Source of the DNA: Mytilus californianus
Taxonomy: Eukaryota
Direction: 5' to 3'
NCBI RefSeq assembly: GCF_021869535.1
Contig: NW_026262690.1
Span: 46,376,001 to 46,440,000, forward strand
Length of the DNA: 64,000 bases
Shown here: positions 8,021-62,934 of the stretch, in pieces
Layout of the letters: each line of letters begins with the position of its first letter
How positions within the stretch are numbered: the first letter of the stretch is position 1
Position numbers and translations under genes: made by a program
Notes under the pieces: model-generated
Database searches by the model: none
What the model was told of the DNA's origin: nothing
What the model saw: the letters and a program-made list of their open reading frames with translations, nothing else

Positions 8021-9623
8021 CATATTAACTCATAATTTCCATCCTATGAGTGAGAAAGGGAAATTTCTGGGTGAGATTGTAATTAAGCCCGATTGGCTTT
8101 TTCATTTGAATTGATAGTTATCTATAAGTCACCAGAGAAAAGTCTCAAATAAAAGAAATACAGAAATAGCAGCTTGAATGAATGATATCAACATCGGTAG
8201 GTATCTTACCCCCTTGTTTTATTAATTTTGTATTTACATTTTGTCATAGATCAAATTTATTCCATCAGTGTATGTTCACTTGTTTTTATTAATATGTCTT
8301 TTGATTGATTCAAGCCATTTCAATTGATATTTTATAGTGTGTCTTTCTATGTTGTGATGTTACACTATTGTTTCAGGCAGGGTGAAGGTTGGCGCCTATC
8401 TAAACGTTTAAACCCGCTGCATTTGTTTGCACCTGTCCTAAGTCAGAAACCTGATGTTCAGTGGTTGTCGTTTGTTGATGTGGTTCATAAGTGTTTCTCG
8501 TTTCTCGTTTTCTATATAGATTAGACCGTTGGTTTTCCTGTTTGAACGGTTTTACACTAGTCATTTCTGGTGCCCTTTATAGCTTGCTGTTCAGTGTGAG
8601 CCAAGGCTCCGTGTTGAAGGCCGTACTTTGACCTATAATGGTTTACTTTTACAAATTCTGACTTGGATGGAGAGTTGTCTCATTGGCACTCATACCACAT
8701 CTTCTTATCTATGTTAATATGATAAACAACTCCTGCACCGAAAAAGGCGAAGAGTAAAAGAAAATGTTTCCTCATTTTCGTATTGTGAATTTTTCTTGTT
8801 CTCGAGCAACATGCCCCGTTTTCTTCAATTTCTGCAGTAATTCGTTAAATTGAAATCAAATGTTTTTTTAAAGTCCATAAGCATAGCAGCAAGATATTCA
8901 GGGCTTATTGATTTCAATCTAATTACACTGTCAACTGAAAAAGTTCAACTGACATCCAAATGCGGATCAAAATACGACCAAAAAATGATTGAAGATGTTA
9001 GAATATTTGACTAACTTGAAAGTCAGAATATTCGCGTGCTCTAATAAGAGAGATCTATATTTCAATTAGATTGATCAATAGCAATACCTTGATCTGAAAG
9101 ATTTTCAAACATATTTAAATATTCAGTCAGGACAAGTAATGAGACATATCAGCGTGTACATTCTTGTTTGTACTGTACTTGTTTTATAATAAGGAGCTTG
9201 GACATGATATATTGTATACTATTCCCAGTAAGGAGTAATAACATATAACACTAATGACTTATTACAGTCGAAATACTTTAGTCCTAATTACAGCCCCTTT
9301 TCTCGGAATATTTAATGAAAATAACAATGGTTTTTTTTCGCAGCTGTGCACATTTTATTTTATTTATGGAGCAGTCAAATTGGTTTTAAGATTCTCCTAA
9401 AGAGTTTCACAGTCTTTTACAATCTAATTAAAATTAAATCTCCGCACTTGCTCCGGGAGTCATACACATCCAATCTGCATTCCCTATCCGATTATATCCC
9501 GAGTCATGATCCTGGAAGACAGAAACGACTCAATCTTAACATTTATGACCCGAAAGACTCTTTATTGCTCCATTATTCCTCGTAAGGTTAATTTTGTTTT
9601 ACCAGAGACATATACTACAATCA

Positions 9624-10942: not shown

Positions 10943-11126
10943 TCATCGCGGACTCCAGTCGGATGAACGATTTTGTCTGTAAAGATTTGTATAAGATGGA
11001 GGATCACTTATGGTTGAAATTGGTGAGTGAACACTGGCTCGAATGTCACTTGGTGAAGCTGTACTTCTACTGAGTAGGGACCTGTCTGAACTAGTTGATG
11101 ATGGTCTTGATCGGGGTCCACGAACT
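10943..11126 (-). CDS. Gene B terminal exon: Ser/Arg/Pro-rich tail ...[20 protein letters not shown]
   Basis: tttttattcag acceptor, phase 2, 60 codons then TGA. Confidence 0.85.
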
Positions 11127-14100
11127 CTGAATAAAAAAAAAGATAGTTCAGTGAAACACTATGTTTAAGAGTAATTTCTTTCATACCTTATTTCAATCAG
11201 TCCTATTTTGTCCACCAAGATTTCTGGGAGAACCTAAGCGGTAAATAGGACGTTAAAAATTTAACGATAGTTTGTGTGAATGTTATTATTGATATTCATC
11301 AGATAGCGGTGTACAATGAATAAACACTAATAACAAAGACGAAGTTATAAAAGAACACGTATTCTGAGAGTATTGCATGGCAATACATAGTCCCCTGCCG
11401 GGTAAAAATTCATTTTACTGGAACAAAATGCTAACTTGTTCTATAACTTGTCATGGTGTAAACAAAAAGTAAATATCAGGTCAATATCTTCAAGCATGAC
11501 TAAAAACAGTGTGGACAACTGATTACATGAGTGAAAAAAACATTAGATATGATTAATAGTTCTCTAAAATTAGATATGATGTAATACAGTGTATATCTAT
11601 TTTCAAATTATAATCAAATATAATTAATAGTTCCAAATATTTTTTCTTTCATTTGTTACAAACTAATATAGATTTGTAGCTTATCTATAAAAGGTCAACA
11701 ACTTTTATCTACACAATGAAATGTATTGAAATATATACATTAATAAAAATAGATTATTATCATAATTTTTTTTATATCTATAGCATTCAGAAAATTAGTT
11801 TATACTAAATAACAAACACACCTGCCAAAAAAATCTTCAAATAATTTAACAAAGAATGCCTTTTAAAAAATGAGTTATCTCCCTTTGTACAGAAATATGG
11901 TTTAACATAGTACTCGAACATTAGATATGGTCCAGAGTTATGGTCCATAACTCTGGACTAAATCATCAGACCGGAACAAAATTCGAACTTGATCTATAAC
12001 TTGTCATGATAAAACTATGTATCAAATATCAAATCAATATCTTCAAGAACGAAGAAAAAAAGTGTGGAAAGCTGATTTGCCGGACTGACGGATGGACAGA
12101 TGGACAGATGGACAGACGGACAGACGGACGGACGAACGGAGTGCAAACCTAAAGTCCCTTCGACTTCGTCGGTAGGGGACTAAAAATGTGTGTTCAACGA
12201 ATTTATTCCAATATTTAATTAAACACAATAAAGTTAATGCAAATGTACATTATGACTAACAATTTTTGATATTGAATATCACATACCCGTCATTTTTATT
12301 GAAGCATCTTGGTCTGATAAGTTTATGCCAGAGAACACACAAAAGTAAACCTGTAGCTATTCCAATGGGTAGTCCAACAACACCGGCTATTAAATCATCT
12401 GTTGAAAACCCTTCTGTCTTAGGTTGTGGAAATGGTAACTTTACACGACGACCATTCAGTAAACACATACAGTGATTGTCATCATCAACACCACAACTCT
12501 GGTAGAAAACAGAAACATAAGTTAATAGTATGTATTAGATGTAAGCTTCTCATATCTGATGGGCGTTAGCTAGGAAGACATGAGACGATTACATCTGATT
12601 TACATGAAGTAATAAATAGATATTTTATCTTTTCTCTTGTTCTAAAAGAGCAATTAGTTGATAAAACAGGAAAAGTGTCATTACCTCAAATTTACCAGAT
12701 GCAGGGACACTTTCAGAAGATGTTTTGTAGTTATGGATTTGGAATGAAATCTTAATTTCGTCTATTTTTCTGTCATCATTTATCAATGCTTTTGTATGGC
12801 AATATGAATCGCTGTACTATCTTGTCTTTTTTGGGTTTAACTGCCAAAATCTGAAATTTTTGCTGATAAATGATAACACTTCTGTGTGAGATAAGATGAC
12901 ATTTGAAACTGCCCAGATGTACTGTGGATAGGGGATTTAAAAAAAGTATATGATAGGAATGTATTTGTAGGTTTTTTAATGACCTCCTTTAATTTAAGCA
13001 ATTTTCCATACTCAAAATCATCGTGACAAATCAGTAAATCATCAACAACAACAAATGTATGCAAATACGCTATTGAAATAGATATGGTGCAAATATTTGT
13101 AAAAATTATATTTGCACATGCGCTTAATTTGAGTCTTTTTTGTATTTGTTTTCCTTTTTTTAATACGATTTTAAATGTTCTTTAATTTTCAAATCTAATA
13201 TTTTCCATTATTATATTAGAGACGCAGTATGTATGAACTACAGTTATTTTAAGATTGAATGGATACTAGAAAAAAGAGGGTCCATGCACCAAGGGCCTGT
13301 ATTCTAAAGCACGAAAAATGAATATCTGACTGTCAATAATAAGAATCCAAGTAATCATTTTACCTCAGGTTGATATATTTCACAGTCTAGACCTATGTAC
13401 CCACTCGGACAGGAACATCTGTAACTATCTTTGTAGTTTGTACATACACCATTGTTAGCACATGGGTTTGGCTTACAAAAATCATGTGCTGTAAAAGAAG
13501 CGAAGAGTTTGTATTTATGGATAATAAATCACAAGATTAAAGAAATGTAAAATACATCAATTTTCGATACTAGTAATATAAAAGGTTTTTTTTTTTTAGC
13601 AATAATGGGTTTTCGGATTAATAGTAAGGATGTGTACGATTTGTATTGTGTTGTTTATAGTATATATATCTATAAAATGGGAAAATCATTAGTTTTACCT
13701 TAAACTATGCATTAACTTCTATATTATCAGGGTAAACATGGTTTTCGTTCTTTTTTTCTGTCACAGAAAAATCTATGGACACCGAACCTCTCCCTGTGCA
13801 ATGTAGAAGTCTGTCTTCAATGGAAGTTGGTGCTTATGATTATGTTAAATTTGTTCATTTTGAACAGTTTATATAAAAATATGGAGATCGTTTAGTTTAC
13901 TAGCGTTATCAATCATTGAAACTTCAAAAACTGAGCTATTTTGATAAATGTATGATGTAGATTATTTATGTGAACAAAACTTTCGACAACTACTAGCCAT
14001 CAAGCTAAGTTTTTTTTTACTAATAGTTTATGCTTTCTGGATTACAGTTGTCACTATTTTTTATTTCCAATGCTGTCAATATGTTTTGCACAGCAGCACT

Positions 14101-17100
14101 TATCAGAAAAAAGATAATTGCAGATTGTCGGATATAAGTCAGGGATCATTTTGAAAAAAAAAACATACTTACGAGTGCTACAGTTTTTGCCTTTGTATTC
14201 AATAGGACATTCGCAGAAGAAATCACCGACCATGTCTGTACAAGTCCCGCCGTTTTCACACGGGCTGCTGGCACACTCGTCCAAATCTGTGAATTTATGT
14301 ATATCTATGTTAAATTGAATAAAAAATGTTTGTGTATAGATATATACTTTTGTTATTAATTTTTGTAAACATTTTTAAAGACATTTTACTTTCCACCATT
14401 GATTTAAAAGTATCTTGAAACAACGTCATTGCAGTGTTTGTTAAATGATTCTTACCTATATTGCAGTTGTAACCAGTGTATCCAGGACCACACGAACAGG
14501 TATAACCTGTACTTGTTGATGTGCATGTTCCGAAGTTCTGACAAGGCGATGAGGCACAATAATCAATGGCTGCAAATAAGAGTAACATATAATTGTTTGT
14601 ATTGTTTAAACATGGTTCCTGCTAGTATTTTCTATGATTTAACGTCTTGTCCTATATACTTGATAATATAATCTTTGTTGTTAATAAGAAGTTGCCATTT
14701 ATTTATTTTATACAGCTAGAATTGATGAATGTCTTTTTTCAATACAATCGGACAATTCAAGCAGTCGGCAATCAGTCAAGCAACATAATCACGAATCATG
14801 CCTTGTAATAAGTTATTTCTGGATCATTCTTCCAAATTTTAGTAGTTTTTTTCATGTAGCTAACATGAAACCAGTATATTATAGGAACAAAATGTAGAGG
14901 TACTCACCTTGGCATTCGTTACCCATAAAACCAATTGGACAAAAACATTTATAATCACCAACTTGGTCCCAACAAGTGCCACCATTTTTACATGGAGAAC
15001 TTAAGCAATCATTAACATCTAAAAATATCAAAATGTGCATGAGTTATTACTGAAATATATGATAAATAAAAATGAAGCAAATTAGTAGACTAAATTGTAG
15101 TATTACTATTACTTGTCAGACACATATGTTTGTGTTTTAGGATAGAGAAATACTTTAACATATTCAATACAGGCGTTCTCATAATTAGTAAAATTATCAC
15201 AAAACATCACATAATAACATTGTAGCATCTAACCAATTTAATAATGTTTTAATGATTTTTCTTAAATTCTACTAATTTCTATGGCAGAGTTCCTTTCGTC
15301 ATTCAAATGTGTTATTATACTCATGAAATGTACAATTTACAAATAATAACTAATGTACCTATTGAACAGTTTCTGCCTTCATATTCCGGTGTACATGTGC
15401 ATACAAAGCTGTCCAACTGCACTTGACACGAACCTCCATGTTCACATGGGTTTGCCGTGCATGGGTCCTCCACTAAAATGATGATACAGTATCAATATTA
15501 TCAGTGATCTTGCACTAATAGTTTATATAGTAAAATCAAAGTTGATTTGGATGAAATTATGTATTTTTCTACTTTCAGCATTTGGTGTCGTTTACCCATA
15601 TACATCTTTTTTCATATAATGTTAGAATAACGCTTTATAAACTTGTTGCGTCCAAGTTGTTTGTTTGGATTAACCTTCATCAGAAACGCTCAAAACAAAA
15701 AAATCGAAAACCAATGATGTATGAGTTATAAATAATGGAGAAGCAACATAACCAAATGTGACATAAACAGAAGAGCCAACACAATCTAAGGTCAACTTTG
15801 GCTGATGGACTTGGAAACTTAGTTTCTAGGTAATTTCGAACTTTGTCGAAGGACTATTTATCTTTAAGGAATGCATGTCACGAGATTCTAACTTATGATA
15901 TAGAACTATGATCATATAGTATTCATTCGTATTACAGAGATCTGTAAAGTAACATACCTCCTGCTAAAAGTGTCAAACAATGTTGTTCGCTGTACAATCT
16001 GTTAAAAGAAAACAAATAGCAACTAGATTTTTTAAACTCTAGATTAAAATGATTTGTAACATATGTATTAATTTGATCCTCTCAACTGTCATGTTTAGTC
16101 GTCATATTTTCACATTTTGTTTATACATTTAAATAATTATGAGCTTATGTAACCATAATTGTATTGAAGCATTTTAAGTATTGCCAGCATGGTAAGCTTG
16201 AGGGTCAGCAAAATTTCTAAGAGCTTGTATCACACTCAGGGTAAAAACCCGAAAGTGACTGAAACATAGCCGATTTTAATACCAAACAGCGTAACTTTGA
16301 TACCTTTAATATTTTTCGACATTTTCCCATTGAGTCCATATAATTAAACTCTTATTCTAAACCATAAGGGTCAAACAAAAATTTCCGAAACAGTGTAAGG
16401 TAAACTTTACGTGAGGGAGTTATATCCTTATTCTAATAACGTTTATGACAAAGTTCCTGACTTACGGGACAGGCGCATACACTTGCCATTGGGTTAAACA
16501 AATCAAAATCCTAGACCGACGTCTTTCATTTACGACCACGTGCACAGTAAGACATATAATGGAGAATAAAAACGGGGAATGTGTCAAAGAGAAAACAATC
16601 CTACCAAAGTGCAGAAAACAGCACAAGGCCAATAATGGATCTTCAACGCAGCCAGAAAATTCCGCACCCGGAGCCGTGCTTCAGCTGGACACTAAACCAT
16701 AATGTATACTATTAGGAAAAAACAAAGGATATGGAGTATCCATCCATAACACAAAATCAGTATATAAACAGTAAAAAAAAAAACACTAAAAGCAAAGGAA
16801 CACCAAGATCATGACTACCCCTTTTACACTAAGAACTAACTGTCTGACTGGGATAAAGTTAACACGACCTTTTCAAGACCATCTTTAAAACAGCATAATG
16901 GCACTTACCCTCTATCGTCAACGGCCTGAAAACATATGATGTTTGTCGAGTATTGAATAGGTTTAGGTGTCCATGAAAACTCTGTGCTATATACCTGACC
17001 ACTTTCATTCTGTAATGGAGTATGTGCTGTGTCATATGGTACCGAGGTAACAATAGTTTGAATCCTGAAATAGATCGAAGTTGCATAAGTAGTAAAATTT

Positions 17101-20100
17101 AAGTACTAAAAAAAATCAATTAATTCCGTCGAGAAATCAGAATAATGCGCCTATAAATAAGAAATAATAAGGATGCAAGATACAATAGAAACCATAGGAA
17201 TATAACTCCATCAGCCTATAGTGGGTTAAAACATTGCATACAAGGTCAATCTGCAAAAATAATATCATGTTATTAATTTTTATTACTGTTTAGAACAACA
17301 GCAGTTTCCCCTGATATTATAACCCTTTTTTTCCAGATATGATAGTATACAAATATATCACCTATCATTTAATTCAATTACTGGATATGATAGGGTAAGC
17401 TTAAATCACTTAACAAATCCCAGTAACGACAAAATTTCAATGCAAACAATTTTGTCTTTTTTTTTAGTTTTTTTTTCTGTCACAACTTTACCTCACAGCT
17501 GGTGAATTAAATTTTGCGTATATTTTCTGTTTGAATGTGTCTCCTTTAGGAACAATAAACACTTGTCCATTTGGTGGAGTTGGGTTTTCTATTTGTGGAA
17601 TATCAGAACACGTTGTGGAAACTTTCACTGTCGTTACAACAAACTGGAAAGAAAGAAAAAAAAACAGCAGATAACATACGGCATTTTACTAAGAAAATAG
17701 CATGTTTATGTTGAATGTCAGATTATAATTTGTTATGAAGATTTGGAAGGTGGATCCCATTCAGACACATACCTGTAGTGGTACCTGACTCAGTGCAGTA
17801 TTTGGGTTAACAGTACTAGAACCAACTGTGATTGTGGTGTGTGGAGAATCTTCTACGGTCAACGTGATTATGTAGGTTCCATTATGGATAAATCCTGTAA
17901 CAGTCTTTGGTTGTATTGTTAAAATACATCTTTGCTGAAAACACAAGAAAAGAAAACGCATGCTTAGATAGGATGTGTATAAACGTTTCATATTCTACAA
18001 GAATATTTAATAAAAAAAAAACCAATACTCGATACCGTTGCTGGTGCAATATCAGTCCTCCAATAGCTCAGAAGTCAGTACTTCGTCACTGACATGATTT
18101 ATAACTTTTTAAAATTCTTCGTTGGTAAATTTAGAAAATTATTAGAAAACTTAGGTTCCAACTCCCTCAGGTAAACTAACCCTTATGTGGATTTGGTTAC
18201 TCTTTTTGTGTCCCTTTGATCATAGCAGTTTAATATTCAATAACTTATTACCCCATTAGGCTTCAAATTTTTGGGTATGAGCGTTCCTGATAATCTAGGA
18301 AAGCGCTTTATCGTCAAATTATCATCAAATTTATAAACTGTTATTTTCATCATTTAACCATTCGAATCTTAGTGCAATACAACCACTAAAAATAAAACAT
18401 TCGTCGTTCTGGTTTCCTTGCTGAAGCGAAATTGTCAGCTTAATATTCAATACAAACCGATGTCCTTTAAAGATTTCTAGCTAGGGTTTCGTGTGATTTT
18501 TTGCCTCTCTATCTCATCAACAATTCATGGACATAGTTACACTATGCTGAATACTTAACAGTCGAATATTTTAAAACATTTAATCTTATATTAATGCTTA
18601 CCGAATCTAGTTTTGATTCAGGTAGCCCATTACAAACGCCACCGCACTCTACACCAGCAGACCATCGACATGAGGTAACATCGCCATCCGGGTCATATAC
18701 TGGAAGCTGTATACTGGTAATACAGTCAAATGGTATTCTGGAATAACGAAAATGTTGTTAACTTCATCTCCATATGTATTAATTTGTGACCATTTGCTAG
18801 CTATAATACATTTTTGTTTTTGTTTGGTTTTGCGCATTGACAGCTTATTTTTACTTCGTTGAGTCATTATTTTATAAGACTGATATATTATATATATTTG
18901 TCTTTTTGGCTCCCAAATGTAAGAAAGATTATAAAATAATAGACGCATACGATCATGTAGACACAATAAACAAAAAACTATAAATAGTACCAAGGTTCTG
19001 TTCGTCTTTATTTTCGATCGAAATTCTTTTACGAAAGGGTAACAAACAAACAATGTCTGCATATATAATATACACGCTTTACAATTCGATTGACGACTAA
19101 AGAATTTTAACTCTAGCTAATCAAATAAGTCTGTGTGTAAAATGTCATTTCACAAAAACCTAGACCTCAGGTGGCCGATCTGTTAACAAATATTTGTACG
19201 TCAAGTCAAAGAATAGATTTGATTCCTCTGTAACTTTTTGAGATGAAAACTGGATCAATCAATAATACCGAGTATTACTTTTAAGATTGGTTTAGTCCGT
19301 TATAAATACAGTGGATCAATTAGAGGATATAACTTTTGCCATAATATATTAGAGCTACCATATTGCAATGTGAATAAATTAGAGTTTGCTTTTTACAGTT
19401 CTTTGGCACACAAAAAAAAAAAACAACCTTGAACAGAGTATACTGTTTTTTATATAACAGACGGTGCTTATTTGATGTTTTTTCTCAACAAATGCAATAC
19501 CTAGATTAAACACTAAACCCCAGATAATAAAACTTCTGCAATATACATGTATTTCAGCTTATAGGTTTCACTTCCTCAAATCTTTTTGACATCTAACATT
19601 GATATTAGACTTCTTTTTTTCAAAAATAGTATTATCATGTATTTCTGTATCACTCGTAACTTAATACTTTTACCTTAAATGAAACTTAAACACATCTCAT
19701 AATTTAAAAAAGCTTTTGTAATTAAACAGACATCAAATTAACCAAAACAAAATTCACATATGTACACTTTTTAAAGAATCATATGATCTGGACCATAACA
19801 TATCAATGCCAGATTGCTGGGAAAAGATGAATATATCTTATGACTGCCAAACGGTCAATACCAATTTTAGTGGGTTTTAAGTCCTTGAAGATATTATTCA
19901 AACGGTATATTATGATGTTGTCTCTATAAAAAAAAATGAACGTAAGTTCATTGTGTAAATCTTAAATCTTCATTTTTTTTCAGGCAAACAGTTTCATATG
20001 TTTTTGTTATATTTCAAACCTTTTTTTAGATCATCTTCCAAAAGATATCACGGTTTTAAACATCATTAACTTTGCAAGTTGTGAATCAGTTTGGGTCAAA

Positions 20101-23100
20101 CCTAGACTGAATAACACTGAGGTAGTCTATTGTCAATGGAATATGCTGGATGAACGTACAAATAAAGATGATTTAACAAACGTTTACCCTGCAGATGAAT
20201 TGGCACTCGTTATAGCTGAAAAAGTTTTCGCGACCAAATCAGAAAACGGTGGTACTTTAATGGAAACTATTGGCGAAATATTGTATAAATTCTTATAAAA
20301 AATGTATTCCTCCGGATTTGATCCGAAAAATTCCTGGGTGGTTCATTTCAGTCCACTAAATGATCATTGAGACATCATGCAAAACAGTTTTACAAAGGCT
20401 ATTATGAAATATATATACAATTGGAAATCAATCTGGCCTAAAATATCCTCAACCATAGTTACAGTAATAGGCAAAGGACAACTAATTTTACCCAATATAA
20501 AAATGAGGAGATGTGGTATGATTGCCAATGAGACCACTATCCACCAAAGTTCAAATGAAGTGGATGTAAACAATGATATGCAACCGTACGGACTTCAACA
20601 ATGAGAGAAACCCATACCGTATAATCGGCTATAAAAGACCCTATCATGAAAGATATGAAACAATTCAAATGAGAAAACTAAAGGCCTGGTTAATAACAAA
20701 ACAATTTACGAAAAAAATATGACAGACATGAACCAACGACAACTTCTGAACTACAGCCCCTGACTTGGGACAGGCACATAAAGAATGTGGCGGGGAAAAC
20801 ATGTTTGAAGGCGCCAACCTCTCATAACCCGGGACAGTGGTAAAACAGTACAACATAATAACAAACTATAAAAATCAGTTGAAAAGCTAGAGAGTGGAGG
20901 GGGTACTAGTATATAGTTATTCACCTGTCAGTCCGTCCGTCCATTAGTCATTTTTGTTCCTAATACTTTCATATACAATGTACTTTATATCGGATTGCAA
21001 CCCTACTTGGATTTATGTTCATATATGTATTGAGAGAAAGATTTATACTGAATTTGAGGTCAAACACTCAAAGGTCAATGTCATGATTACTAATAGAAAA
21101 TAGACCACAATTTGTACAAAAGCGGTTTTCGAATGGTAAATCAAAAACTTCATATGGGTTGCAACCTTACTTAAGGGTGTGTGTTCGCATATAATTAAAG
21201 GAAGATCCCAATTGATTTATGAGGTCATTACCCCAAAGGTGAATTTCAATGTTACTAAAGATAGACCAAATTTTGTGCAGAAAAATGGTTAAAAGATACT
21301 TAATAAAACTAATGATAGGTATGAAACCTTAGTGGTCATATATAGTTAAGAGGAATATCCCTATTAATTTTAAGGTCAAATATTTCAAAGTTCAAAGTCA
21401 TAATTACTAAGAAATAGACCGCAATTTGTGCCGTGGTGATTTCTAAATGCTAAATCATACAAAAACATTTATGATTTCAGTTTAAGGTAAAGAATCAAGG
21501 CCATTAGTTAATCAAAATGAAATGAGTGACATTATCTTTACAAACAATATATCATTAGCTAGAATGTTTGACTGAACAAAGTAAAATACAATAACAATTA
21601 CCTTTAAGTCAAAGGTCAAGGTCATAGGAAGACTAATATGACACTTTATGATTGTTAAATAAAAATCACCGTTTGAAATCAAAATGGACATTGATTATTA
21701 CATTGAAGGAGTATATCACAAAGCCAGTTAAGAAAATATGTTTGTGAAATTCTGTTATTGCGGTTCAAAATTGTATCGGATGACTCCCATCGACTCACCA
21801 AAATTGCCACGTAAATAAAAAGAAAAAAAAAAAAAAAAAAAAACAGTCAATAGTTATATATCATGGTATTTAGTTTATAGTATTATATGGAAAGTTGTAT
21901 GTACTTTTTTCTTCTTCAGCCAAAGCTAAAGAAAAATCCAAATGTCAAAAGATAAGTAGAACCTTATGGATACAATCTTATCTGTTTGATAGTTGAATGA
22001 CTAGAATCATTTTACTCACTGATACTTAGGTAACGAGGATGTTACTGGAGACGAATTTGGTCGCTTTGTATCACTTCTTATTCTGAGGTCAATAGTTGTT
22101 TGGATGTAAACATTTCCCGTTGATCCATAGTCGTGGTGTATCCAAGGATTCCCAGTATACCTAAAAGTATAATAAAAAATTTCACAATCTAATCTTAATT
22201 CATAAAACCTTACCAGATTTAATTAAGAACATTCGATAAAAATAGAAAATTAGCTATTTTCTGATGCTAACAGTCTTTCTTCGTATATACAAAGACGTTA
22301 TCTTCTACTAAGAAACAGTGTCGCTTTTCTGGTCGTCGTGAATACTTTTTCGACTATATTCATAGCTGTAACAATTTTCAGTTGTTTTCGTAGGTCTACA
22401 TCGTTTGCTTTCAGCGTTTTTTTTTATCGGATATCTTGTCTACTATCATTGCTGAACTACGAAGATATTTTTACTATCAATGATAAACCACGAAGGTTCG
22501 TTGTTCAGCTTTCATGGTTCAGGTTCAGGTTCGTGGTTCAGCAATGAATATCCGTTTAAAAACGTTGAAAGCAAATATGGACCTACGAAGGCTTATATCA
22601 TAGGACTAGTCTTTAAATATAAGAACACAAAAAAAATGTGGAATGACCATCAATGAATCTGCGAATAAAAAAATAAATGAAAAGACAAGTACTCACGACA
22701 CTATGAACTTGCCAGATGATGGAAATGTGTGACTGATGAATTCGTCACCTTGCTCCCAATCAGACTTTGAGTAAGATGCACAATGATAATTGAGATCTCC
22801 GTAAGTGATGTTCTGTGAAGGTGTACATCCGTGTGTACAGGCAAGACTATTACCTCCGACCAAACCACTAGCAAACGAACCAACAGGAACTGTGTCACCA
22901 CAACCAGGGCCTTTACCATACTGGAAACCATAACGTCCATGGAGGTTTACCTAACAAATCCGACAGAAAAAAATCGAATTCTATATTTTATCAGTATATT
23001 TCTATTAATCCTATAACTATTCTAATGGCTTTCATTTTGTCATCAGGCAATCTACTCCTGGCTTAATTTCAAATTTTTAATTGTGTTTTAACCGTCTAAG

Positions 23101-23994
23101 ATTATTTTAAAAGACCGTATAAATATAGTGCATGGTTATAAGTAATCTTCACCTACATTTTTGCTTCATATTTCATATGATTATTCCTAATAAATATTGT
23201 GAAGGTATTCGAATTTGATTTTTTACCAAGCAGGTGTTGAAAATCGCAGAATTGTTTGAATTCTAAATAATTATTTATTCTTTATTTTTTTTACATTTTG
23301 TTGAAAAAAATATAGAAAATTTCTGGACAAATTCAACATTGGGGTTTATGACTGTTCACATCTTTATACTATAGTCTATGGATAGTGGTCTCATGGTCAA
23401 TTATACCACATATCCCTTATCTTTATATTTATCGAGCAGATGCTTCTTATCTGTAAAATCTTTTAACCTTTTAATTTTGCAGCGTTGTTACAATGGAATA
23501 TTATTGTTGAAACGAAAAAAAGTTCTGGTTAAAATTTATTTCTCGTCGTTTACATCGATACCATTTGATATTCAGGGGAGGGGGAAAGGGAGGGGGTTGG
23601 ACTGAATATTCATTTTTACCTATTGCAAGACTCGCATATTTTTTTTTGGTTCTTAATTTTCTACCCAATAATTTCCTGCAGCTTGCTGTATTTAGGGAGT
23701 CAGAATAATCATTTTCATCCTGTCTTCGGAAAGATTATTCATCTTCAATTCTTACCATGTCGGACTTCAATTTCAAAATCCTCCTGTCAATGTTACTTAA
23801 AACAAAATAAAGTAGGGAATATTTCATAACTGAACACCTAACTCATCAATTGAACGTTTTCATTTTCATCTAGAATTTACCTGAGTGTTTAGTGGTAAGC
23901 CTATTGGTTCCCAACTCACAGTTCCACCTAGAAAATTGGCAAAAATTACTCGAAAATTCACTCCAACAAAAACAAGAAATGCTGTTAAATTCAT
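10943..23994 (-). CDS. Gene B (complete, 15 coding exons, 709 aa): signal peptide + Sib/integrin-beta-like-protein ectodomain + 5 EGF + Cx7CxC + TM + cytoplasmic tail
   Basis: All 15 exons have GT-AG boundaries with matching phases and join into one ORF (2130 nt incl. stop) from ATG at 23994 to TGA at 10943. Confidence 0.9.
11370..12185 (-). mobile_element. HINE/DINE-1-type element in the last intron of gene B
   Basis: TTTTTAGTCCCCTACCG 5' subTIR, (GTCC/GTCT)n microsatellite, CGGCAGGGGACTA 3' subTIR and GTATTGCCATGCAATAC hairpin. Confidence 0.8.
12287..12498 (-). CDS. Gene B Cx7CxC + transmembrane exon: [14 protein letters not shown]...[29 protein letters not shown]
   Basis: ctaccag / gtatgt, phase 0-2; hydrophobic helix followed by basic residues. 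Confidence 0.9.
13364..13488 (-). CDS. Gene B EGF 5 + linker: [41 protein letters not shown]
   Basis: ttacag / gtaaaa, phase 1-0. Confidence 0.9.
14173..14286 (-). CDS. Gene B EGF 4 (cbEGF): [38 protein letters not shown]
   Basis: 114 bp, phase 1-1; in ORF 14054-14284. Confidence 0.93.
14456..14569 (-). CDS. Gene B EGF 3: [39 protein letters not shown]
   Basis: 114 bp, phase 1-1; in ORF 14310-14588. Confidence 0.93.
   Translation of the reverse strand, partial: PLIIVPHRLVRTSEHAHQQVQVIPVRVVLDTLVTTAI
14908..15018 (-). CDS. Gene B EGF 2: [38 protein letters not shown]
   Basis: 111 bp, phase 1-1, ag / gtgagt. Confidence 0.92.
15359..15472 (-). CDS. Gene B EGF 1: [39 protein letters not shown]
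   Basis: 114 bp, phase 1-1, six-Cys EGF spacing. Confidence 0.92.
   Translation of the reverse strand, partial: WRTHARQTHVNMEVRVKCSWTALYAHVHRNMKAETVQ
15958..15998 (-). CDS. Gene B exon 8 (41 bp): [13 protein letters not shown]
   Basis: ttttaacag / gtatgt; supplies the required phase 2 to phase 1 bridge into the EGF exons. Confidence 0.8.
16909..17064 (-). CDS. Gene B exon 7: IQTIVTSVP...[23 protein letters not shown]
   Basis: tttcag / gtaagt, phase 2-2, WTP...ICFQA motif. Confidence 0.88.
17492..17643 (-). CDS. Gene B exon 6: [26 protein letters not shown]...KFNSPAV
   Basis: ttccag / gtaaag, phase 0-2. Confidence 0.85.
17773..17934 (-). CDS. Gene B exon 5: [10 protein letters not shown]...[13 protein letters not shown]...ALSQVPLQ
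   Basis: tttcag / gtatgt, phase 0-0; also in ORF 17761-17991. Confidence 0.9.
18602..18737 (-). CDS. Gene B exon 4: [45 protein letters not shown]
   Basis: ttccag / gtaagc, phase 2-0, carries the DPDGD..CRW...ECGGVC motif. Confidence 0.9.
19777..20298 (+). pseudogene. Candidate two-exon antisense coding remnant in gene B intron 3 (19777-19941 and 20030-20298), product unidentified
   Basis: Phase-matched C|gtaagt...tttttttag|AT intron. The downstream exon is about 89 open codons and protein-like; the upstream exon has an in-frame TAA at 19878. Confidence 0.35.
20501..20885. repeat. Abundant interspersed repeat (agatgtggtatgattgccaatgagac... family); related copies at about 8331-8710 (inverted), 25310-25735, 26530-26715, 47670-47745 and 51490-51530
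   Basis: Multiple homologous copies in both orientations. Confidence 0.75.
20890..21660 (+). mobile_element. Degraded HINE-like element with (GTCC)n head and ggtcaaaggtcaa internal repeats
   Basis: Microsatellite head and recurring internal units; termini eroded. Confidence 0.45.
22020..22160 (-). CDS. Gene B exon 3: YTGNPWIHH...[25 protein letters not shown]
   Basis: ttttag / gtgagt, phase 2-2, carries the RSDT..PNSSP motif. Confidence 0.9.
22697..22950 (-). CDS. Gene B exon 2: [19 protein letters not shown]...[31 protein letters not shown]
   Basis: ttgttag acceptor, gtgagt donor, phase 0-2, open frame. Confidence 0.9.
23881..23994 (-). CDS. Gene B exon 1: [38 protein letters not shown] (signal peptide + FxGGTVSW motif)
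   Basis: ATG, hydrophobic N-terminus, CAG|gtaaat donor, phase 0. Confidence 0.85.
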
Positions 23995-26060
23995 ATTTGT
24001 GACACAATATCCAACTGACCAAAGTTTTACGGATGCAATTTTCCCTTTCTATCTGCTATATATTACCAATATAATATATCTGTAGGTAATATACAGTTAT
24101 CAAGTAATTTAAATCCTTTGATGAAAGTGATTCTTCTACTGACTACGATAATTTGTCTATCTGTTTAAATACAACAGTGATAAGTTTGTACGGGTGCCAA
24201 GAGGTGTTGACAATGTAAAAGCTCAGAACGACTGTAAATTTAAATGTAACTGAAAGTTGGTCAAGTTATGTGTTATAAAATAACCACGTTTTCTGTATCA
24301 ACAAGTTTGCCTAATAATTGCTTATTCCCCAAATCAGATTTATCAATTCACATGGATATGGTTCTTCCCAGTCTTTACAATATTCCAATAGAACTAGAAA
24401 TTGAGAAGAGTTCTAAACCTTTCTGTTAGATACGAGCTAATTCAACGATTATAAAAAATGTAACTGTTAGATGTGAAAACTCTGATGAATGATACCAGGA
24501 ATCGAACATTTCTATTTGGAAAGTCCAACTTCCTGGTGGATATGTGTTTTGGAAAGAGACCAATCGAACAGAAATGATATTTCAACTTGCTTACATCTTT
24601 ATTTCTTACCACGAGTCACATGTTTGTTACAACTTTACATGTATGCGGAAAGACATTTATTTCAGCGTGCTTTCTGGTTAGAGTTTGGTGGTTGTCTTTC
24701 CTGCAACACACGGTATTGTGGGTGAAATTTTGGTATAATTTTTCTGACGACGACGGCGGCGTTAATAATTTGCAGATACTCTTATATCCCCATGTTATCT
24801 AGGTTAAGAAATGTACAAAAGTGGTTCATCGCGAGACCTTGTCACCATTCATTGTCACCTGATATTGACCTCATTTTCACGACCTATCGGTCAGATTAAA
24901 TATCCAGTCTTCAATTTATCTCTCATGTGTACTTACAAAATAAATCGTGAAAAAATTAAGGCGAAGATGTTTAACGAAGTCATTTCAATTTGTTTTCTTC
25001 TTAAAATAAGATATTTGTCAGATGTTGAACGTGTCTTATTGAAACCCATTGCATATTACTATCACAGCAATCAACGCCAGTTTTCCATTTTGGTATGAAA
25101 AAAACAGCATATGCCTCAGTGACCCACTGTATTGAGTGAAATTATTTATTTCTCCGAGGGATTAAACGAATTAAATAAACTCTTTGCAGTTGATATCTGT
25201 GTAACTTAACTAATGGCCATAATTGTTCTTCCAATCGAACACTTTTGGTTTATCTGAAATTATTTTGTTTTTATTTTCCAAACAAAACATAAGAGACAAA
25301 GTTAGCAGTTGATTGTCAATGAGACACCTTTCCACCAGAGTCAAAATGATGTGGATGTAAGCAACAATAGGTCAGCGAACGACTATCAACAATGAGCAAA
25401 ACCAATACTGTATAGTCGGCTATAAAAGGCCCCGACATGACAAATTATGAAACAGTCTAAACGAAACGAGAAAACCAACGGTCTGATTTATGACAAAACA
25501 ATTAACGAAAAAACAAATATGACAGACAGCAATTATCGACAACAACTCAATTCCAGGCTCCTCGCCTTGGACAGGCACATAAAGAATGCAAAGGGCTAAA
25601 CATGTTTGTGAGCGCCCAATCCTCCTATAACCCAGGAAAGTGGTGTAACTAGACGATTTGTTTATGTTTTGATCTTATAAAAACAAGAGGATGTGGTATG
25701 ATTGCCAATAAGACAACTATCCAGAGTTCAAATGACTTAGACAGTTTTGGGTTTCAATCCTAGACGGGTTTAGCTTTTTTGTTAAGGTCATTTGATTTCA
25801 AGTTTCAGAACGTTTTATGTATTTTAATGATACTAAATTTTTAATCTTGCACTAATTGAAAATAGATTTTTTCAAAAACGAGGTCTGGTGACAGTAAAGA
25901 AAGATGTAAAAAAAGGTTTTGGTAAATTTTTTTATGAAAAAGTTTTTTTTTATTTCAATCTAGGCACATGGTGATGTTTCAAACTAGAAACTGTCCTCGA
26001 CAATAGTTGTCTTGGTGTTAATATTAATAACTTTTAAAAAGTTCTTTTTGTGTCACAACA

Positions 26061-26478: not shown

Positions 26479-29400
26479 ACAAATGTTATGAACGCTGATA
26501 TTATAAAGAATGAAAAAAAAACCAGTTTAATATAAAAATAAGAAGATGTGGTATGATTGCCAATGAGACAATTCTCCACAAGACACCAAATGACATAGAA
26601 GTTTAAAACTATGGGTCACCGCACGACCTTCAAAAATGAGCAAAATCCATACCGCATAGTCAGCTATAAAAGGCCTCGAAATAAAAAATGTACAACAATT
26701 CAAAAGAGAAAACTCAGATCTACCTCCAAAAAATAAAATACAACAATTCGTGCTATGTTATATACGCTTCTTTATTTTCTATTTCTATTTTTTTCTTACT
26801 GTTTTTCTTTTTGTAATTCAATCCTTAAATGTTCAATAGTCTTGTTTTGATTTATAATTGATTTTGTGTCACTCACTTATGTACTCAATTTTCTCAACAA
26901 TAAACGAATATATTTTACTTACTTAAATGACTTCCTAGTATATAAACGATAAATACAAATGTGAAAAAATCCACTCAGTAAATATCTGTTTTTATATATA
27001 TATATTTTTGGGCTTCTTGACTAAAACTGTCAGACGACTCCCTTAAATGGTGATACTGTACAAACATTTAAAAAAAAAGGAATTATAGAAAATATTTCAT
27101 GGGGATATAACTTTTAGAAATCAGAAGATTCGAAGTGAAAGTTTGTATCATAAAATCTTAAACACCGTTTCAGTTAGAGAGCACATGACAATATCAGACG
27201 ACTTGTTTTAAGAGTGATTGTCCTTTTGTGACGAATTTAATCCTTTCTAGCGTTTTTTTCCTATTCTATTTTAATAGATTGATGGAAACTTGAAATAGTA
27301 AAAGCGATAAGCAAAACAAGATCTACAAATTAGTTGAACTGCTGAAATGGTCATTCGACTCCTTTTAAGAATTCTTGCTTTTTTTGCTATACCTTTGAAA
27401 ACAATAATAATGTAGAGAATTAGCTTTTGAAAATAACAAATGACCAGCAAGACAAGATCCACAAATCAGTAAATGACAGAAATCTGTTGTTGACCTCTCA
27501 TTGGAATTATTAGCTTTAAGTGATGATTTATATCCATTTTTGCGTTTTTGTCTTAGTAGATAGAGAGAAACTTTAAACAGTAAAAAGTACGATCAACAAG
27601 ATAACTTTATAAAGTCAGTCCAAATAGCTGAAGTCATTTCATATTCTATAGTGGTCAGTCGAATCCTTATTGGAGTTAACGCCTTTAATTAATATTTTGA
27701 CAAATTTTCCGGACATTATGTAGTTTTTTCAATAATTAGTGTGAAAAATATAATAGATAAACCGAAACTTCGAACAGCAAAAACGATCAGCAAGACAATG
27801 TCTTCACAGAAGTCAATATGACTGAAGTCGTCAATCGACTGCTTACATGAGCTGTCTCCACGAAATCACATTTTTAACCCATTTTTTTCATTTTGCCTAT
27901 CATCTTGAAAGTCTAAATGGATAGGCGAAAACCTCTGTCCAGCAGAAATGATCAACCAGACAAAATTTTAAATTGGCCCATATAGTTTACATTCAACACA
28001 AATATTTTGTAGTTGCATTGTATGTATTTTGTGCAATTATACCAGATAACCGATACCGGGTCACTGGAGCCTCTATGTTTTACACAAGTTCAACTTCGAG
28101 AGGTTAATATGACGTTGGAAAACATTTCGAGAATTACTTGTTTTAAATTTGGCACACCACCACAGCAGTCTCGTGGTAGCATGCTCGTTAAATAGAAAAG
28201 ACTAAACGGCTCGGAGTCTGACAAATGTGTCCCTAAGGTAACATCTCTTTCTGTGGAGTGATACACTGTGAGGTTGCATTTGAAAAAATTGGCTTGGTGT
28301 GTCCAGCTAGTACACCAGGGTTCATAATATTGTCACTAACATGCCATCGTCTTGAAAAAGGCTGAATAATTACGTTTCACATGCATCGATTTGTTCCTTG
28401 TTTTTTCGTATATTGAAATATAATCATACATTTGAATTATTTCCAGAAAAGAACATTTGCTTGCATCTTTTATGTCGTCTAATAGTTTAGAGAATTTAAA
28501 TTTGAGTGGTTTTGGTAGGAATGTTCATAATCACAGCTTTTCTTAATAAGTCTTAAACAAACTAAACTTAATGCTTGTAATGAGATCTAAAATAGGTAAT
28601 GTAATCAACAAGAAACGGAGTCCTAAATCCTGATGATGTACATACATTTATGAAAATGCAGTCGTAGAAAATACTCCATGGAAACATATCATTTATATAT
28701 CAGAAGATTCGAAGTAAAATTTTGAACCATAAGTCTGAAGATCCTTTAATTAAAGCATGAGCTCACACGAAGCAGATTGATCAAAACTAAAAGGAAGGAA
28801 ACCCAAGTAACCCAAATTAACATTTCAATTTGACGGGAAATTTTCGAATTCTATTGATTCTTAAGGTCAATTACTCATAAACCATTTTATGTATACACCG
28901 ACAAGTTGAAATGAAGTACTGTGTTCGCACAAGTTTTGCTCGTATGCCAGTATAAGTATACACAAATGAATTATGATCTTCCTCTTCCTACATGTATAAC
29001 ACTCTCTTCAATTGATAACCAATAAAAATTAAAAATTATTGATTGACTGGATATTTCACATTGGTTAATCGTTAATCTATAGAACTAGGAAGTCATGTAT
29101 GTAAATAAAACAGGTTCTTTGGTTGTTGAGAAAGTTAAGTAGATAAGTTGGACTAAAACGTAAAATCAATTACAAATCAAATAAAACAACACTTGCGGGT
29201 GGTATTCTAAAGCATTTAACTTTTTAAATGAGAATGATAAAACCGTAAGAAGAAAGGAAATAGAAAATAAAGAAGAGCTTATAACATGACACAACATCGC
29301 ATGAATTGTTGTATTTCAATATTGTATACTGTAAATTCATTTAAAAAGAGCCCAATATTCGTATGGATTTGGAATTCTAGAAACCTCCGAAATTTTCCGA

Positions 29401-33286: not shown

Positions 33287-62934
<29,648 letters not shown>

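What the first reader, a model, noticed from the sequence alone, without database searches (positions are those of the whole stretch)
15958..23994. Gene B ectodomain is a Sib/'integrin-beta-like'-type module grafted onto EGF repeats and a TM anchor
Seen: exons 1-8 encode, in order, [43 protein letters not shown]...[27 protein letters not shown] and WTP...ICFQA.D..G...C.TL. Recalled knowledge: this motif series resembles Dictyostelium Sib adhesion proteins, many uncharacterised invertebrate proteins, and Bacteroidetes surface proteins (H..GG.I.Y / NSSP.F / DPDGD). Inference: this is a largely uncharacterised adhesion or microbe-recognition receptor with a patchily distributed domain. The ORF track misses it almost entirely because it is split across short exons.
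Basis: partly seen in the sequence, partly recalled or inferred. Interest (0 to 1): 0.75.

Follow-up and report, generated by a model that had tools for sequence, protein, structure and literature searches.

The report
Mollusc surface receptor with Sib-type head
This is an intact 15-exon gene for a single-pass surface protein whose three-domain tip is related to the tip of the amoeba adhesion protein Sib and resembles Bacteroidota surface proteins; the family is already in the databases, but its function in animals has not been studied.

Summary
On the minus strand, 15 GT-AG exons (23994 to 10943) splice into one open 2130-nt frame of 709 aa.

- **Gene model:** the protein is collinear over residues 1-705 with scallop proteins (about 44% identity, 603 bits).
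- **Head:** residues about 18-392 form a conserved unit of three beta-sandwich domains. A model of the closest homologue has pLDDT 93.6.
- **D1:** matches Pfam PF24907, the N-terminal domain of Dictyostelium Sib A-E. Three close homologues pass its gathering cut-off.
- **D2 and D3:** D2 is a PKD domain. D3 weakly matches PF24910, the third Ig-like domain of Sib.
- **Bacteria:** the whole head superposes on Bacteroidota T9SS surface proteins at TM 0.60-0.65. This is shape evidence only.
- **Not a Sib or an integrin beta:** there is no VWA domain and no NPxY motif.
- **Rest of the protein:** five EGF exons, a glycine-zipper transmembrane helix, and a tail with PPSY and a conserved N[IL]YR...DW motif.
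- **RNA:** one RNA-seq run gave no reads on the exons, so the junctions rest on homology, not RNA.

RefSeq already names homologues "integrin beta-like protein A/C/D". This scan has also noted a 19-EGF paralogue elsewhere in the same genome. I class it as a new member of a known but unstudied family.

The parts
23881..23994 (-). Exon 1: ATG, signal peptide, and the first strand of D1 (..[12 protein letters not shown]..). Ends in phase 0.
   Evidence: aligns with the HFRGGTISW start of homologues
22697..22950 (-). Exon 2: core of D1, the SIBA-E_N-type beta-sandwich (..[25 protein letters not shown]..).
22020..22160 (-). Exon 3: last strands of D1 and the D1-D2 linker ([19 protein letters not shown]).
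   Evidence: in homologues PF24907 reaches this region
18602..18737 (-). Exon 4: start of D2, the PKD-like domain. Carries the DPDGD motif and CRW..ECGGVC.
17773..17934 (-). Exon 5: rest of D2 ([18 protein letters not shown]).
   Evidence: PKD_4, E 0.1; PKD passes its cut-off in P0009 and P0065
17492..17643 (-). Exon 6: end of D2 (FVVTT) and first half of D3.
16909..17064 (-). Exon 7: second half of D3 ([17 protein letters not shown]).
   Evidence: D3 is an Ig-like fold (Z 9.3) and matches PF24910 in homologues
15958..15998 (-). Exon 8: last strand of D3 ([13 protein letters not shown]). Ends in phase 1.
13364..15472 (-). Five EGF exons: 15359-15472, 14908-15018, 14456-14569, 14173-14286 and 13364-13488. 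The first four are 111-114 nt and phase 1-1.
   Evidence: (EGF, E 8e-7)
12287..12498 (-). Exon 14: Cys-containing juxtamembrane stretch and the transmembrane helix [22 protein letters not shown], which carries a GxxxGxxxG glycine zipper.
10943..11126 (-). Exon 15: Ser-rich cytoplasmic tail with PPSY and [12 protein letters not shown], then the stop codon.

Best explanation
Gene B is an intact gene of a mollusc. An earlier scan note calls the genome a mussel; I did not test that.

It encodes a 709-aa type I membrane protein with these parts, in order:
- a signal peptide;
- a rigid head of three beta-sandwich domains (D1 of the SIBA-E_N type, D2 a PKD domain with a DPDGD motif, D3 Ig-like);
- a stalk of five EGF repeats;
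- a transmembrane helix with a glycine zipper;
- a short Ser-rich tail with PPSY and a family-conserved N[IL]YR...DW motif.

**Shown here:** the gene structure, the domain order, homology of the head to the first three domains of Dictyostelium Sib A-E, and conservation of the transmembrane helix and tail across bivalves, gastropods and a nemertean.

**Inferred:** the head, always at the membrane-distal N-terminus, is the ligand- or surface-binding part. The EGF stalk sets its distance from the membrane. The glycine zipper mediates helix-helix association. The conserved tail recruits a cytoplasmic partner, with PPxY pointing to a WW-domain protein. On this reading the protein acts as a cell-adhesion or particle-recognition receptor, by analogy with Sib and with Bacteroidota surface adhesins.

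My confidence is about 0.85 for identity and architecture, and about 0.5 for the adhesion or recognition function.
For: - **Gene model:** 15 GT-AG exons form one 2130-nt frame. The protein is collinear with scallop proteins over residues 1-705 (603 bits).
- **Head is a unit:** about 390 aa align end to end in more than 40 proteins.
- **Structure:** the AF2 model of the closest homologue, built with an alignment that includes the window's exons, has pLDDT 93.6 and pTM 0.91 and shows three beta-sandwich domains.
- **Sib link:** PF24907 passes its cut-off in P0063, P0064 and P0075. Thirteen of 33 homologues hit it and 15 hit PKD. PF24910 lies on D3 in P0065 and P0066. Gene B's D1 scores 85-93 bits against the PF24907-positive proteins, and its D3 scores 47 bits against the PF24910-positive ones.
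- **Bacteroidota:** T9SS proteins superpose at TM 0.60-0.65 over 277-298 residues spanning all three domains, whereas solved multi-Ig proteins reach only about TM 0.2. D1 alone gives TM 0.62. The nearest cluster by features is also Bacteroidota (score 0.89, 193 shared features).
- **Transmembrane helix and tail:** both are conserved. The same N[IL]YR...DW tail is present in the neighbouring gene A.
- **Sib function:** Sib proteins mediate adhesion to substrates and particles (PMC9197732, PMC3279395).
Against: - No RNA support: run X21 gave zero reads on exons 2-7.
- Neither gene B's exons alone nor its closest homologue P0008 hit PF24907. Membership of D1 therefore rests on transitive homology.
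- No Sib sequence and no bacterial sequence could be fetched for direct comparison.
- The head has no solved-structure relative that would indicate a ligand. The best match for D1 is Z 6.3 in a flat list, and no PDB sequence hit was found.
- The function is inferred entirely by analogy.
Confidence: 0.8

Rival explanations
1. The head is just a generic run of Ig, PKD or FN3-like domains. On this view the Sib and Bacteroidota resemblance is the background similarity that any beta-sandwich array shows, not specific homology.
For: - PDB searches return only generic Ig-like matches.
- Most Pfam hits to the Sib families are below the gathering cut-off.
- Gene B itself gives no Pfam hit on single exons.
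Against: - Three homologues pass the curated PF24907 cut-off, two of them (P0063, P0064) over nearly the whole profile.
- Hits fall in the same order as in Sib: N domain on D1, 'third Ig' on D3.
- TM 0.60-0.65 across three domains requires the same inter-domain geometry, which solved multi-Ig proteins do not show (about TM 0.2).
Confidence: 0.07
2. The gene is a silent or decaying copy in a tandem, expanding receptor family. On this view it is an intact-looking reading frame that is no longer used.
For: - No reads on the exons in RNA run X21.
- The tail is shorter than in the orthologues and in gene A.
- Paralogues exist nearby and elsewhere in the genome (scan note s1-274888).
Against: - All 15 exons are open and all splice sites are canonical.
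- The conserved cysteines and motifs are kept.
- Only about 6% of one run of unknown tissue was read, so absence of reads is weak evidence.
Confidence: 0.1
3. The protein works through its EGF repeats as a Notch/Delta-type or matrix/shell-type protein, and the head is a structural spacer rather than a binding module.
For: Automatic names of homologues include fibropellin, jagged, Notch, eyes shut and SVEP1. All of these names are driven by the EGF repeats.
Against: - No DSL, MNNL or other Notch-ligand domain was found.
- The head is the conserved part, and it recurs with unrelated C-terminal partners: ZP, TSP1, Big_5, HYR, Sushi/HRM.
- The number of EGF repeats varies freely: 5 here, at least 26 in gene A, and 19 in the other paralogue.
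Confidence: 0.12

Closest known systems
Dictyostelium discoideum Sib A-E ('similar to integrin beta') adhesion proteins; Pfam PF24907 SIBA-E_N and PF24910 Ig_SIBA-E_3rd
   Same: - Type I membrane protein.
- The membrane-distal N-terminus has the same domain series, with the N domain and the 'third Ig-like' domain in the same order.
- Glycine-rich transmembrane helix.
- Conserved short cytoplasmic tail with a Tyr motif.
   Different: - No VWA domain.
- No NPxY talin-binding motifs; the tail has PPSY and N[IL]YR...DW instead.
- An EGF stalk replaces the long Sib ectodomain.
- 709 aa, against a length I recall (not checked here) as about 1900 aa.
RefSeq 'integrin beta-like protein A/C/D' and 'uncharacterized' proteins of bivalves, for example Argopecten P0008, Mizuhopecten P0009, Mercenaria P0063/P0064, Ruditapes P0061/P0075 and Crassostrea P0016
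   Same: Same architecture throughout: head, EGF stalk, transmembrane helix and tail. The match is 43-45% identity and fully collinear with the scallop proteins. This is the family gene B belongs to.
   Different: Gene B is no closer than about 45% to any protein retrieved. It has N-F-L instead of H-F-R at the start of D1, and a shortened tail.
Bacteroidota T9SS-sorted surface proteins (CHU_C or Por_Secre_tail C-terminal domains)
   Same: The predicted three-domain head has the same shape and inter-domain arrangement (TM 0.60-0.65). It is the nearest non-animal neighbour by both shape and features.
   Different: - Bacterial sorting domain instead of EGF repeats and a transmembrane helix.
- No sequence-level match could be tested here.
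- The relationship could be homology, transfer or convergence.
Metazoan integrin beta subunits
   Same: Single-pass adhesion-receptor layout with an EGF-type stalk and a Tyr-containing tail.
   Different: No PSI, hybrid or beta-I domain, no I-EGF pattern, and no NPxY. It is not an integrin.

Membership tests
Pfam PF24907 (SIBA-E_N) domain family | Score at or above the gathering cut-off (28.1 bits) against the PF24907 profile | tested here: inconclusive
   Gene B's domain is split over exons 1-3, and the spliced protein could not be handed to the scan. Exon 2 alone gives no hit at E<=1. The closest homologue, P0008, also gives no hit. Homologues P0063, P0064 and P0075 pass with 28.6, 28.5 and 31.8 bits.
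Pfam PF24907 (SIBA-E_N) domain family | End-to-end homology of gene B's D1 to proteins that pass the cut-off | tested here: met
   phmmer with gene B residues 18-168 gives P0075 92.8 bits, P0064 84.8 bits and P0063 84.6 bits. The query is covered over positions 3-150 of 151, on the same residues that PF24907 covers.
Dictyostelium Sib (integrin-beta-like) proteins | Extracellular von Willebrand A domain (PMC9197732, PMC3279395) | tested here: not met
   No VWA hit in any exon or homologue. The 709 aa are fully accounted for by the head, five EGF repeats, the transmembrane helix and the tail.
Dictyostelium Sib (integrin-beta-like) proteins | Cytosolic NPxY motifs that bind talin (PMC9197732, PMC12686525) | tested here: not met
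   The tail read has no NPxY. It has PPSY and TNLYR. The orthologues have N[IV]YR.
Dictyostelium Sib (integrin-beta-like) proteins | Glycine-rich single transmembrane domain | tested here: met
   The helix [22 protein letters not shown] carries a GxxxGxxxG pattern and is conserved in scallops, Lineus and Elysia. It was not compared with a Sib sequence.
Dictyostelium Sib (integrin-beta-like) proteins | Third Ig-like domain (PF24910) after the N domain | tested here: inconclusive
   P0065 (19.6 bits) and P0066 (18.3 bits) are below the cut-off of 27, but they cover profile positions 5-85 of 86 on D3. Gene B's D3 scores 47 bits against these two proteins.
PKD domain (PF00801), for D2 | Score at or above the gathering cut-off (23.5 bits) | tested here: inconclusive
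   Gene B's exon 5 alone gives only PKD_4 at E 0.1. Homologues P0009 (26.1 bits) and P0065 (25.7 bits) pass on the equivalent residues. Fifteen members hit at E<0.1.
EGF-repeat type I membrane proteins | EGF domains (PF00008) followed by a transmembrane helix | tested here: met
   The first EGF exon hits PF00008 at E 8e-7. There are five six-cysteine EGF exons and a hydrophobic helix at residues 614-636.
Bacteroidota T9SS surface proteins | C-terminal T9SS sorting domain (CHU_C or Por_Secre_tail) | tested here: not met
   Gene B and its homologues have none. Only the head resembles these proteins, and only by shape.
Integrin beta subunits | PSI, hybrid and beta-I domains, plus a cytoplasmic NPxY | tested here: not met
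   No such Pfam hits, and the tail lacks NPxY.

The most novel reading that the evidence does not exclude
The three-domain head is one inter-kingdom adhesin tip shared by Bacteroidota T9SS surface proteins, amoebozoan Sib proteins and a patchy set of animals. The lophotrochozoan head/EGF/glycine-zipper/N[IL]YR...DW receptors would then be the animal counterpart of Sib: an integrin-independent adhesion or phagocytic receptor family whose EGF stalk length (5, 19, at least 26) tunes its reach.
Probability: 0.2. Interest if true: 0.7.

Novelty: new member of a known kind. Interest (0 to 1): 0.4.

Why it matters
If the head is a binding module shared by bacteria, amoebae and some animals, it would give a handle on integrin-independent adhesion and particle recognition in molluscs and rotifers, and on how such a module moved or persisted across kingdoms.

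As it stands, the family is already catalogued (Pfam PF24907 and PF24910; RefSeq names of the form 'integrin beta-like protein'). This gene adds one more member.

The parts that go beyond the databases are:
- the high-confidence three-domain model of the head;
- the whole-head resemblance to Bacteroidota T9SS proteins;
- the conserved glycine-zipper transmembrane helix and the N[IL]YR...DW tail cassette, which gene B shares with its tandem neighbour.

Tried and rejected
**Searches that gave little or nothing**
- Pfam on single exons: nothing except EGF.
- ESM Atlas features search with exon 2: no usable hit.
- HMMER with exon 2 against 1.84 billion representatives: only 19 hits. Two of them (P0001, P0010) are long repetitive proteins matched only on a short Gly-rich stretch of the query, and I judged them spurious.
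- Profile searches of the head and of D1 against PDB sequences: nothing significant.
- Foldseek and VIA-align against PDB: only generic Ig-like matches.
- NCBIfam on 40 members: nothing.

**Sequences I could not reach**
- Word-limited searches with P0023 and with the profile A1 did not reach Sib or bacterial proteins because of length and word limits.
- The roughly 250-aa metagenomic hits looked like fragmented gene calls on a eukaryotic contig rather than bacterial genes, probably rotifer-type, though the source organism was not checked.
- The Cornillon 2006 and 2008 papers are not held.

**RNA**
- RNA-seq did not cover the exons. Runs X19 and X20 behave like low-depth DNA.

**Ideas dropped**
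- A histidine-brace (LPMO-like) reading of the conserved HFRGG start. The His is not at the predicted mature N-terminus, and it is absent in gene B and in Tegillarca P0002.
- A paralogous head inside this window: none found.
Full report
**1. Observation**

The window is AT-rich (about 32% GC) and looks eukaryotic.

I read the sequence around each stretch and spliced it by script. This gives 15 exons, all with AG acceptors and GT donors and with consistent phases. They form one frame of 2130 nt, or 709 aa.

The protein aligns collinearly with scallop proteins: residues 1-705 against 11-713 of Argopecten P0008, at 603 bits and 43.6% identity. It also aligns with more than 30 other proteins. The window holds no second copy of the head exons.

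**2. What the gene encodes**

- **Signal peptide:** residues 1 to about 19.
- **Head:** residues about 18-392, from exons 1-8.
- **EGF stalk:** five EGF repeats, one per exon. The first four exons are 111-114 nt and phase 1-1.
- **Juxtamembrane and membrane:** a Cys-containing juxtamembrane stretch, then the transmembrane helix [22 protein letters not shown].
- **Tail:** 73 aa, Ser-rich, ending ..[20 protein letters not shown].

**3. The head is a conserved unit**

phmmer with residues 1-392 finds the whole 390-aa unit, end to end, in more than 40 fetched proteins. Their sources are:
- bivalves: scallops, Mercenaria, Ruditapes, Crassostrea, Ostrea, Dreissena, Tegillarca, Mactra;
- gastropods: Elysia, Plakobranchus, Aplysia;
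- the nemertean Lineus;
- the sea star Acanthaster;
- many bdelloid rotifers;
- a frog, in part.

The unit always sits directly after the signal peptide. Its C-terminal partners differ: EGF plus a transmembrane helix, ZP, TSP1, Big_5, HYR, or Sushi/HRM.

The consensus is HFRGGTISW .. GPGC .. WEQG .. RSDTG.PN.SP .. D.DGD.VRCRW..EC..VC .. G.YAVA.T.ED .. LSSVP.QFL ..

**4. Fold**

I modelled the closest full-length homologue (P0008:25-402) with AlphaFold2, using alignment A1, which includes gene B's exons as rows. The model has pLDDT 93.6 and pTM 0.91 and shows three beta-sandwich domains. The spliced gene B protein has no reference, so I did not hand it to the remote tools. The model is therefore a surrogate at 44% identity.

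- **D3:** an ordinary Ig-like fold (Z 9.3, rmsd 2.0 over 89 residues, against the MuSK Ig3 domain).
- **D1 modelled alone:** pLDDT 87.9. It has no close solved relative. The best Z is 6.3 in a flat list, and there are no PDB sequence hits.

**5. Relation to Sib**

Pfam holds families built on Dictyostelium Sib A-E.
- **PF24907 (SIBA-E_N):** matched above its curated cut-off by P0063, P0064 and P0075 (28.6, 28.5 and 31.8 bits against 28.1). The match covers profile positions 1-117 of 119 on residues 26/27-147 for P0063 and P0064, and 1-100 on residues 25-129 for P0075. Thirteen of the 33 full-length homologue rows of A1 hit it at E<0.1.
- **PF24910 (third Ig-like domain of Sib):** lies on D3 in P0065 and P0066. 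The match is nearly full length but below the cut-off.
- **PKD (PF00801):** passes its cut-off on D2 in P0009 and P0065.

Gene B's own domains align end to end with these proteins. D1 scores 85-93 bits, D2 70-91 bits, and D3 47 bits against the PF24910-positive scallop proteins. The link of gene B to the Sib families is therefore transitive, but strong.

RefSeq already calls several homologues 'integrin beta-like protein A/C/D'.

The features that make Sib 'integrin-beta-like' in the literature are a VWA domain, a glycine-rich transmembrane helix, and two NPxY motifs that bind talin (PMC9197732, PMC3279395, PMC12686525). Gene B has no VWA domain and no NPxY motif. It shares the Sib head, not the Sib architecture.

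**6. Relation to bacteria**

- **Whole head, by shape:** a search of the ESM Atlas finds the animal clusters first (molluscs, rotifers, echinoderm ZP proteins; TM 0.78-0.87). Next come five Bacteroidota clusters carrying T9SS sorting domains, at TM 0.60-0.65 over 277-298 residues that span all three domains. Solved multi-Ig proteins reach only about TM 0.2, so the inter-domain geometry is shared, not just the fold.
- **D1 alone:** again picks a Bacteroidota CHU_C cluster (TM 0.62), ahead of unrelated sandwiches.
- **By features:** a language-model search with P0075 puts a Bacteroidota cluster first (0.89, 193 shared features).

I could not fetch any bacterial sequence. This link therefore rests on shape and features only.

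**7. Transmembrane helix and tail**

Within the EGF-stalk orthogroup, the juxtamembrane acid pair and the transmembrane helix are conserved from bivalves to Lineus and Elysia. The pattern is L[IV]AG[LV][IV]G.PIG.A.G...LW[HY], which contains a GxxxGxxxG glycine zipper.

The tails carry N[IV]YR ... Y..G..DW near the C-terminus. Gene B keeps a short version, [12 protein letters not shown], plus a PPSY motif. Similar motifs occur in Mercenaria (PPPSY) and Mactra (PPPRY).

The neighbouring gene A has at least 26 EGF exons on the same strand (34100-62800). It ends in an exon encoding a comparable cassette and the tail ..[24 protein letters not shown]. It is therefore a tandem paralogue whose head must lie beyond the end of the window.

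**8. Expression**

Of the runs offered, only X21 is recorded as RNA. With about 6% of X21 read, no read fell on exons 2-7. All laid reads sit on dispersed repeats in introns, at 20480-20900 and 17880-18280. X19 and X20 cover introns and exons alike at depth 2-7 and behave like DNA.

The junctions therefore rest on canonical splice sites, phase consistency and collinear homology, not on RNA. This neither supports nor refutes the model.

**9. Mechanism (inferred)**

A membrane-distal rigid head on an EGF stalk of variable length, a self-associating transmembrane helix, and a conserved tail add up to an adhesion or recognition receptor. The analogy is with Sib, which mediates adhesion to substrates and particles, and with Bacteroidota surface adhesins.

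One published data point may bear on this. [quoted passage not shown] I could not verify that this transcript belongs to the family.

**10. Novelty**

The family is in Pfam and RefSeq. This scan has already followed up a 19-EGF paralogue elsewhere in the same genome, with the same conclusion (note s1-274888). That note is an AI note, and I reached my reading independently before seeing it.

Gene B is a new member of a known but functionally unstudied kind. The more novel reading is that this is an inter-kingdom adhesin head and that the lophotrochozoan receptors are animal counterparts of Sib. The evidence does not exclude it, but it is unproven.

Noticed in passing
window 33287-62800, minus strand: Gene A has at least 26 EGF-type exons and a terminal exon (33287-33709) that encodes a Cys-rich juxtamembrane stretch, a transmembrane helix, and a tail ending TNIYRA...HDW*. 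This is the same tail motif as in gene B's orthologues. Gene A is therefore a tandem paralogue of gene B whose head lies beyond the end of the window.
   Followed up: partly
window 20495-20885 (intron 3 of gene B); also 25310-25644, 26529-26714, 8318-8708, 4444-4519 and others: A dispersed repeat with at least 8 partial copies in the window (68-88% identity). It is very heavily covered in the RNA run and in the contig sets, so it is a high-copy, transcribed element. A second covered patch lies at 17880-18280.
   Followed up: partly
window 11417-11524 and 11970-12077 (intron 14 of gene B): Two direct copies of a 108-bp segment at 79% identity, next to ORF-like stretches rich in [11 protein letters not shown]. 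This is probably another repeat family.
   Followed up: no
window 13364-15472: The first four EGF exons are 111-114 nt each and phase 1-1. This is the classic layout for exon shuffling and for changing the number of EGF repeats between paralogues (5 here, 19 elsewhere, at least 26 in gene A).
   Followed up: partly
L001 8001-8789 (ENA metagenome contig, 511 kb): Metagenomic 'proteins' of about 250 aa that match two thirds of the head are pieces of a split gene call on a contig that looks eukaryotic, probably rotifer-type. They do not look bacterial.
   Followed up: partly
   Followed up: no
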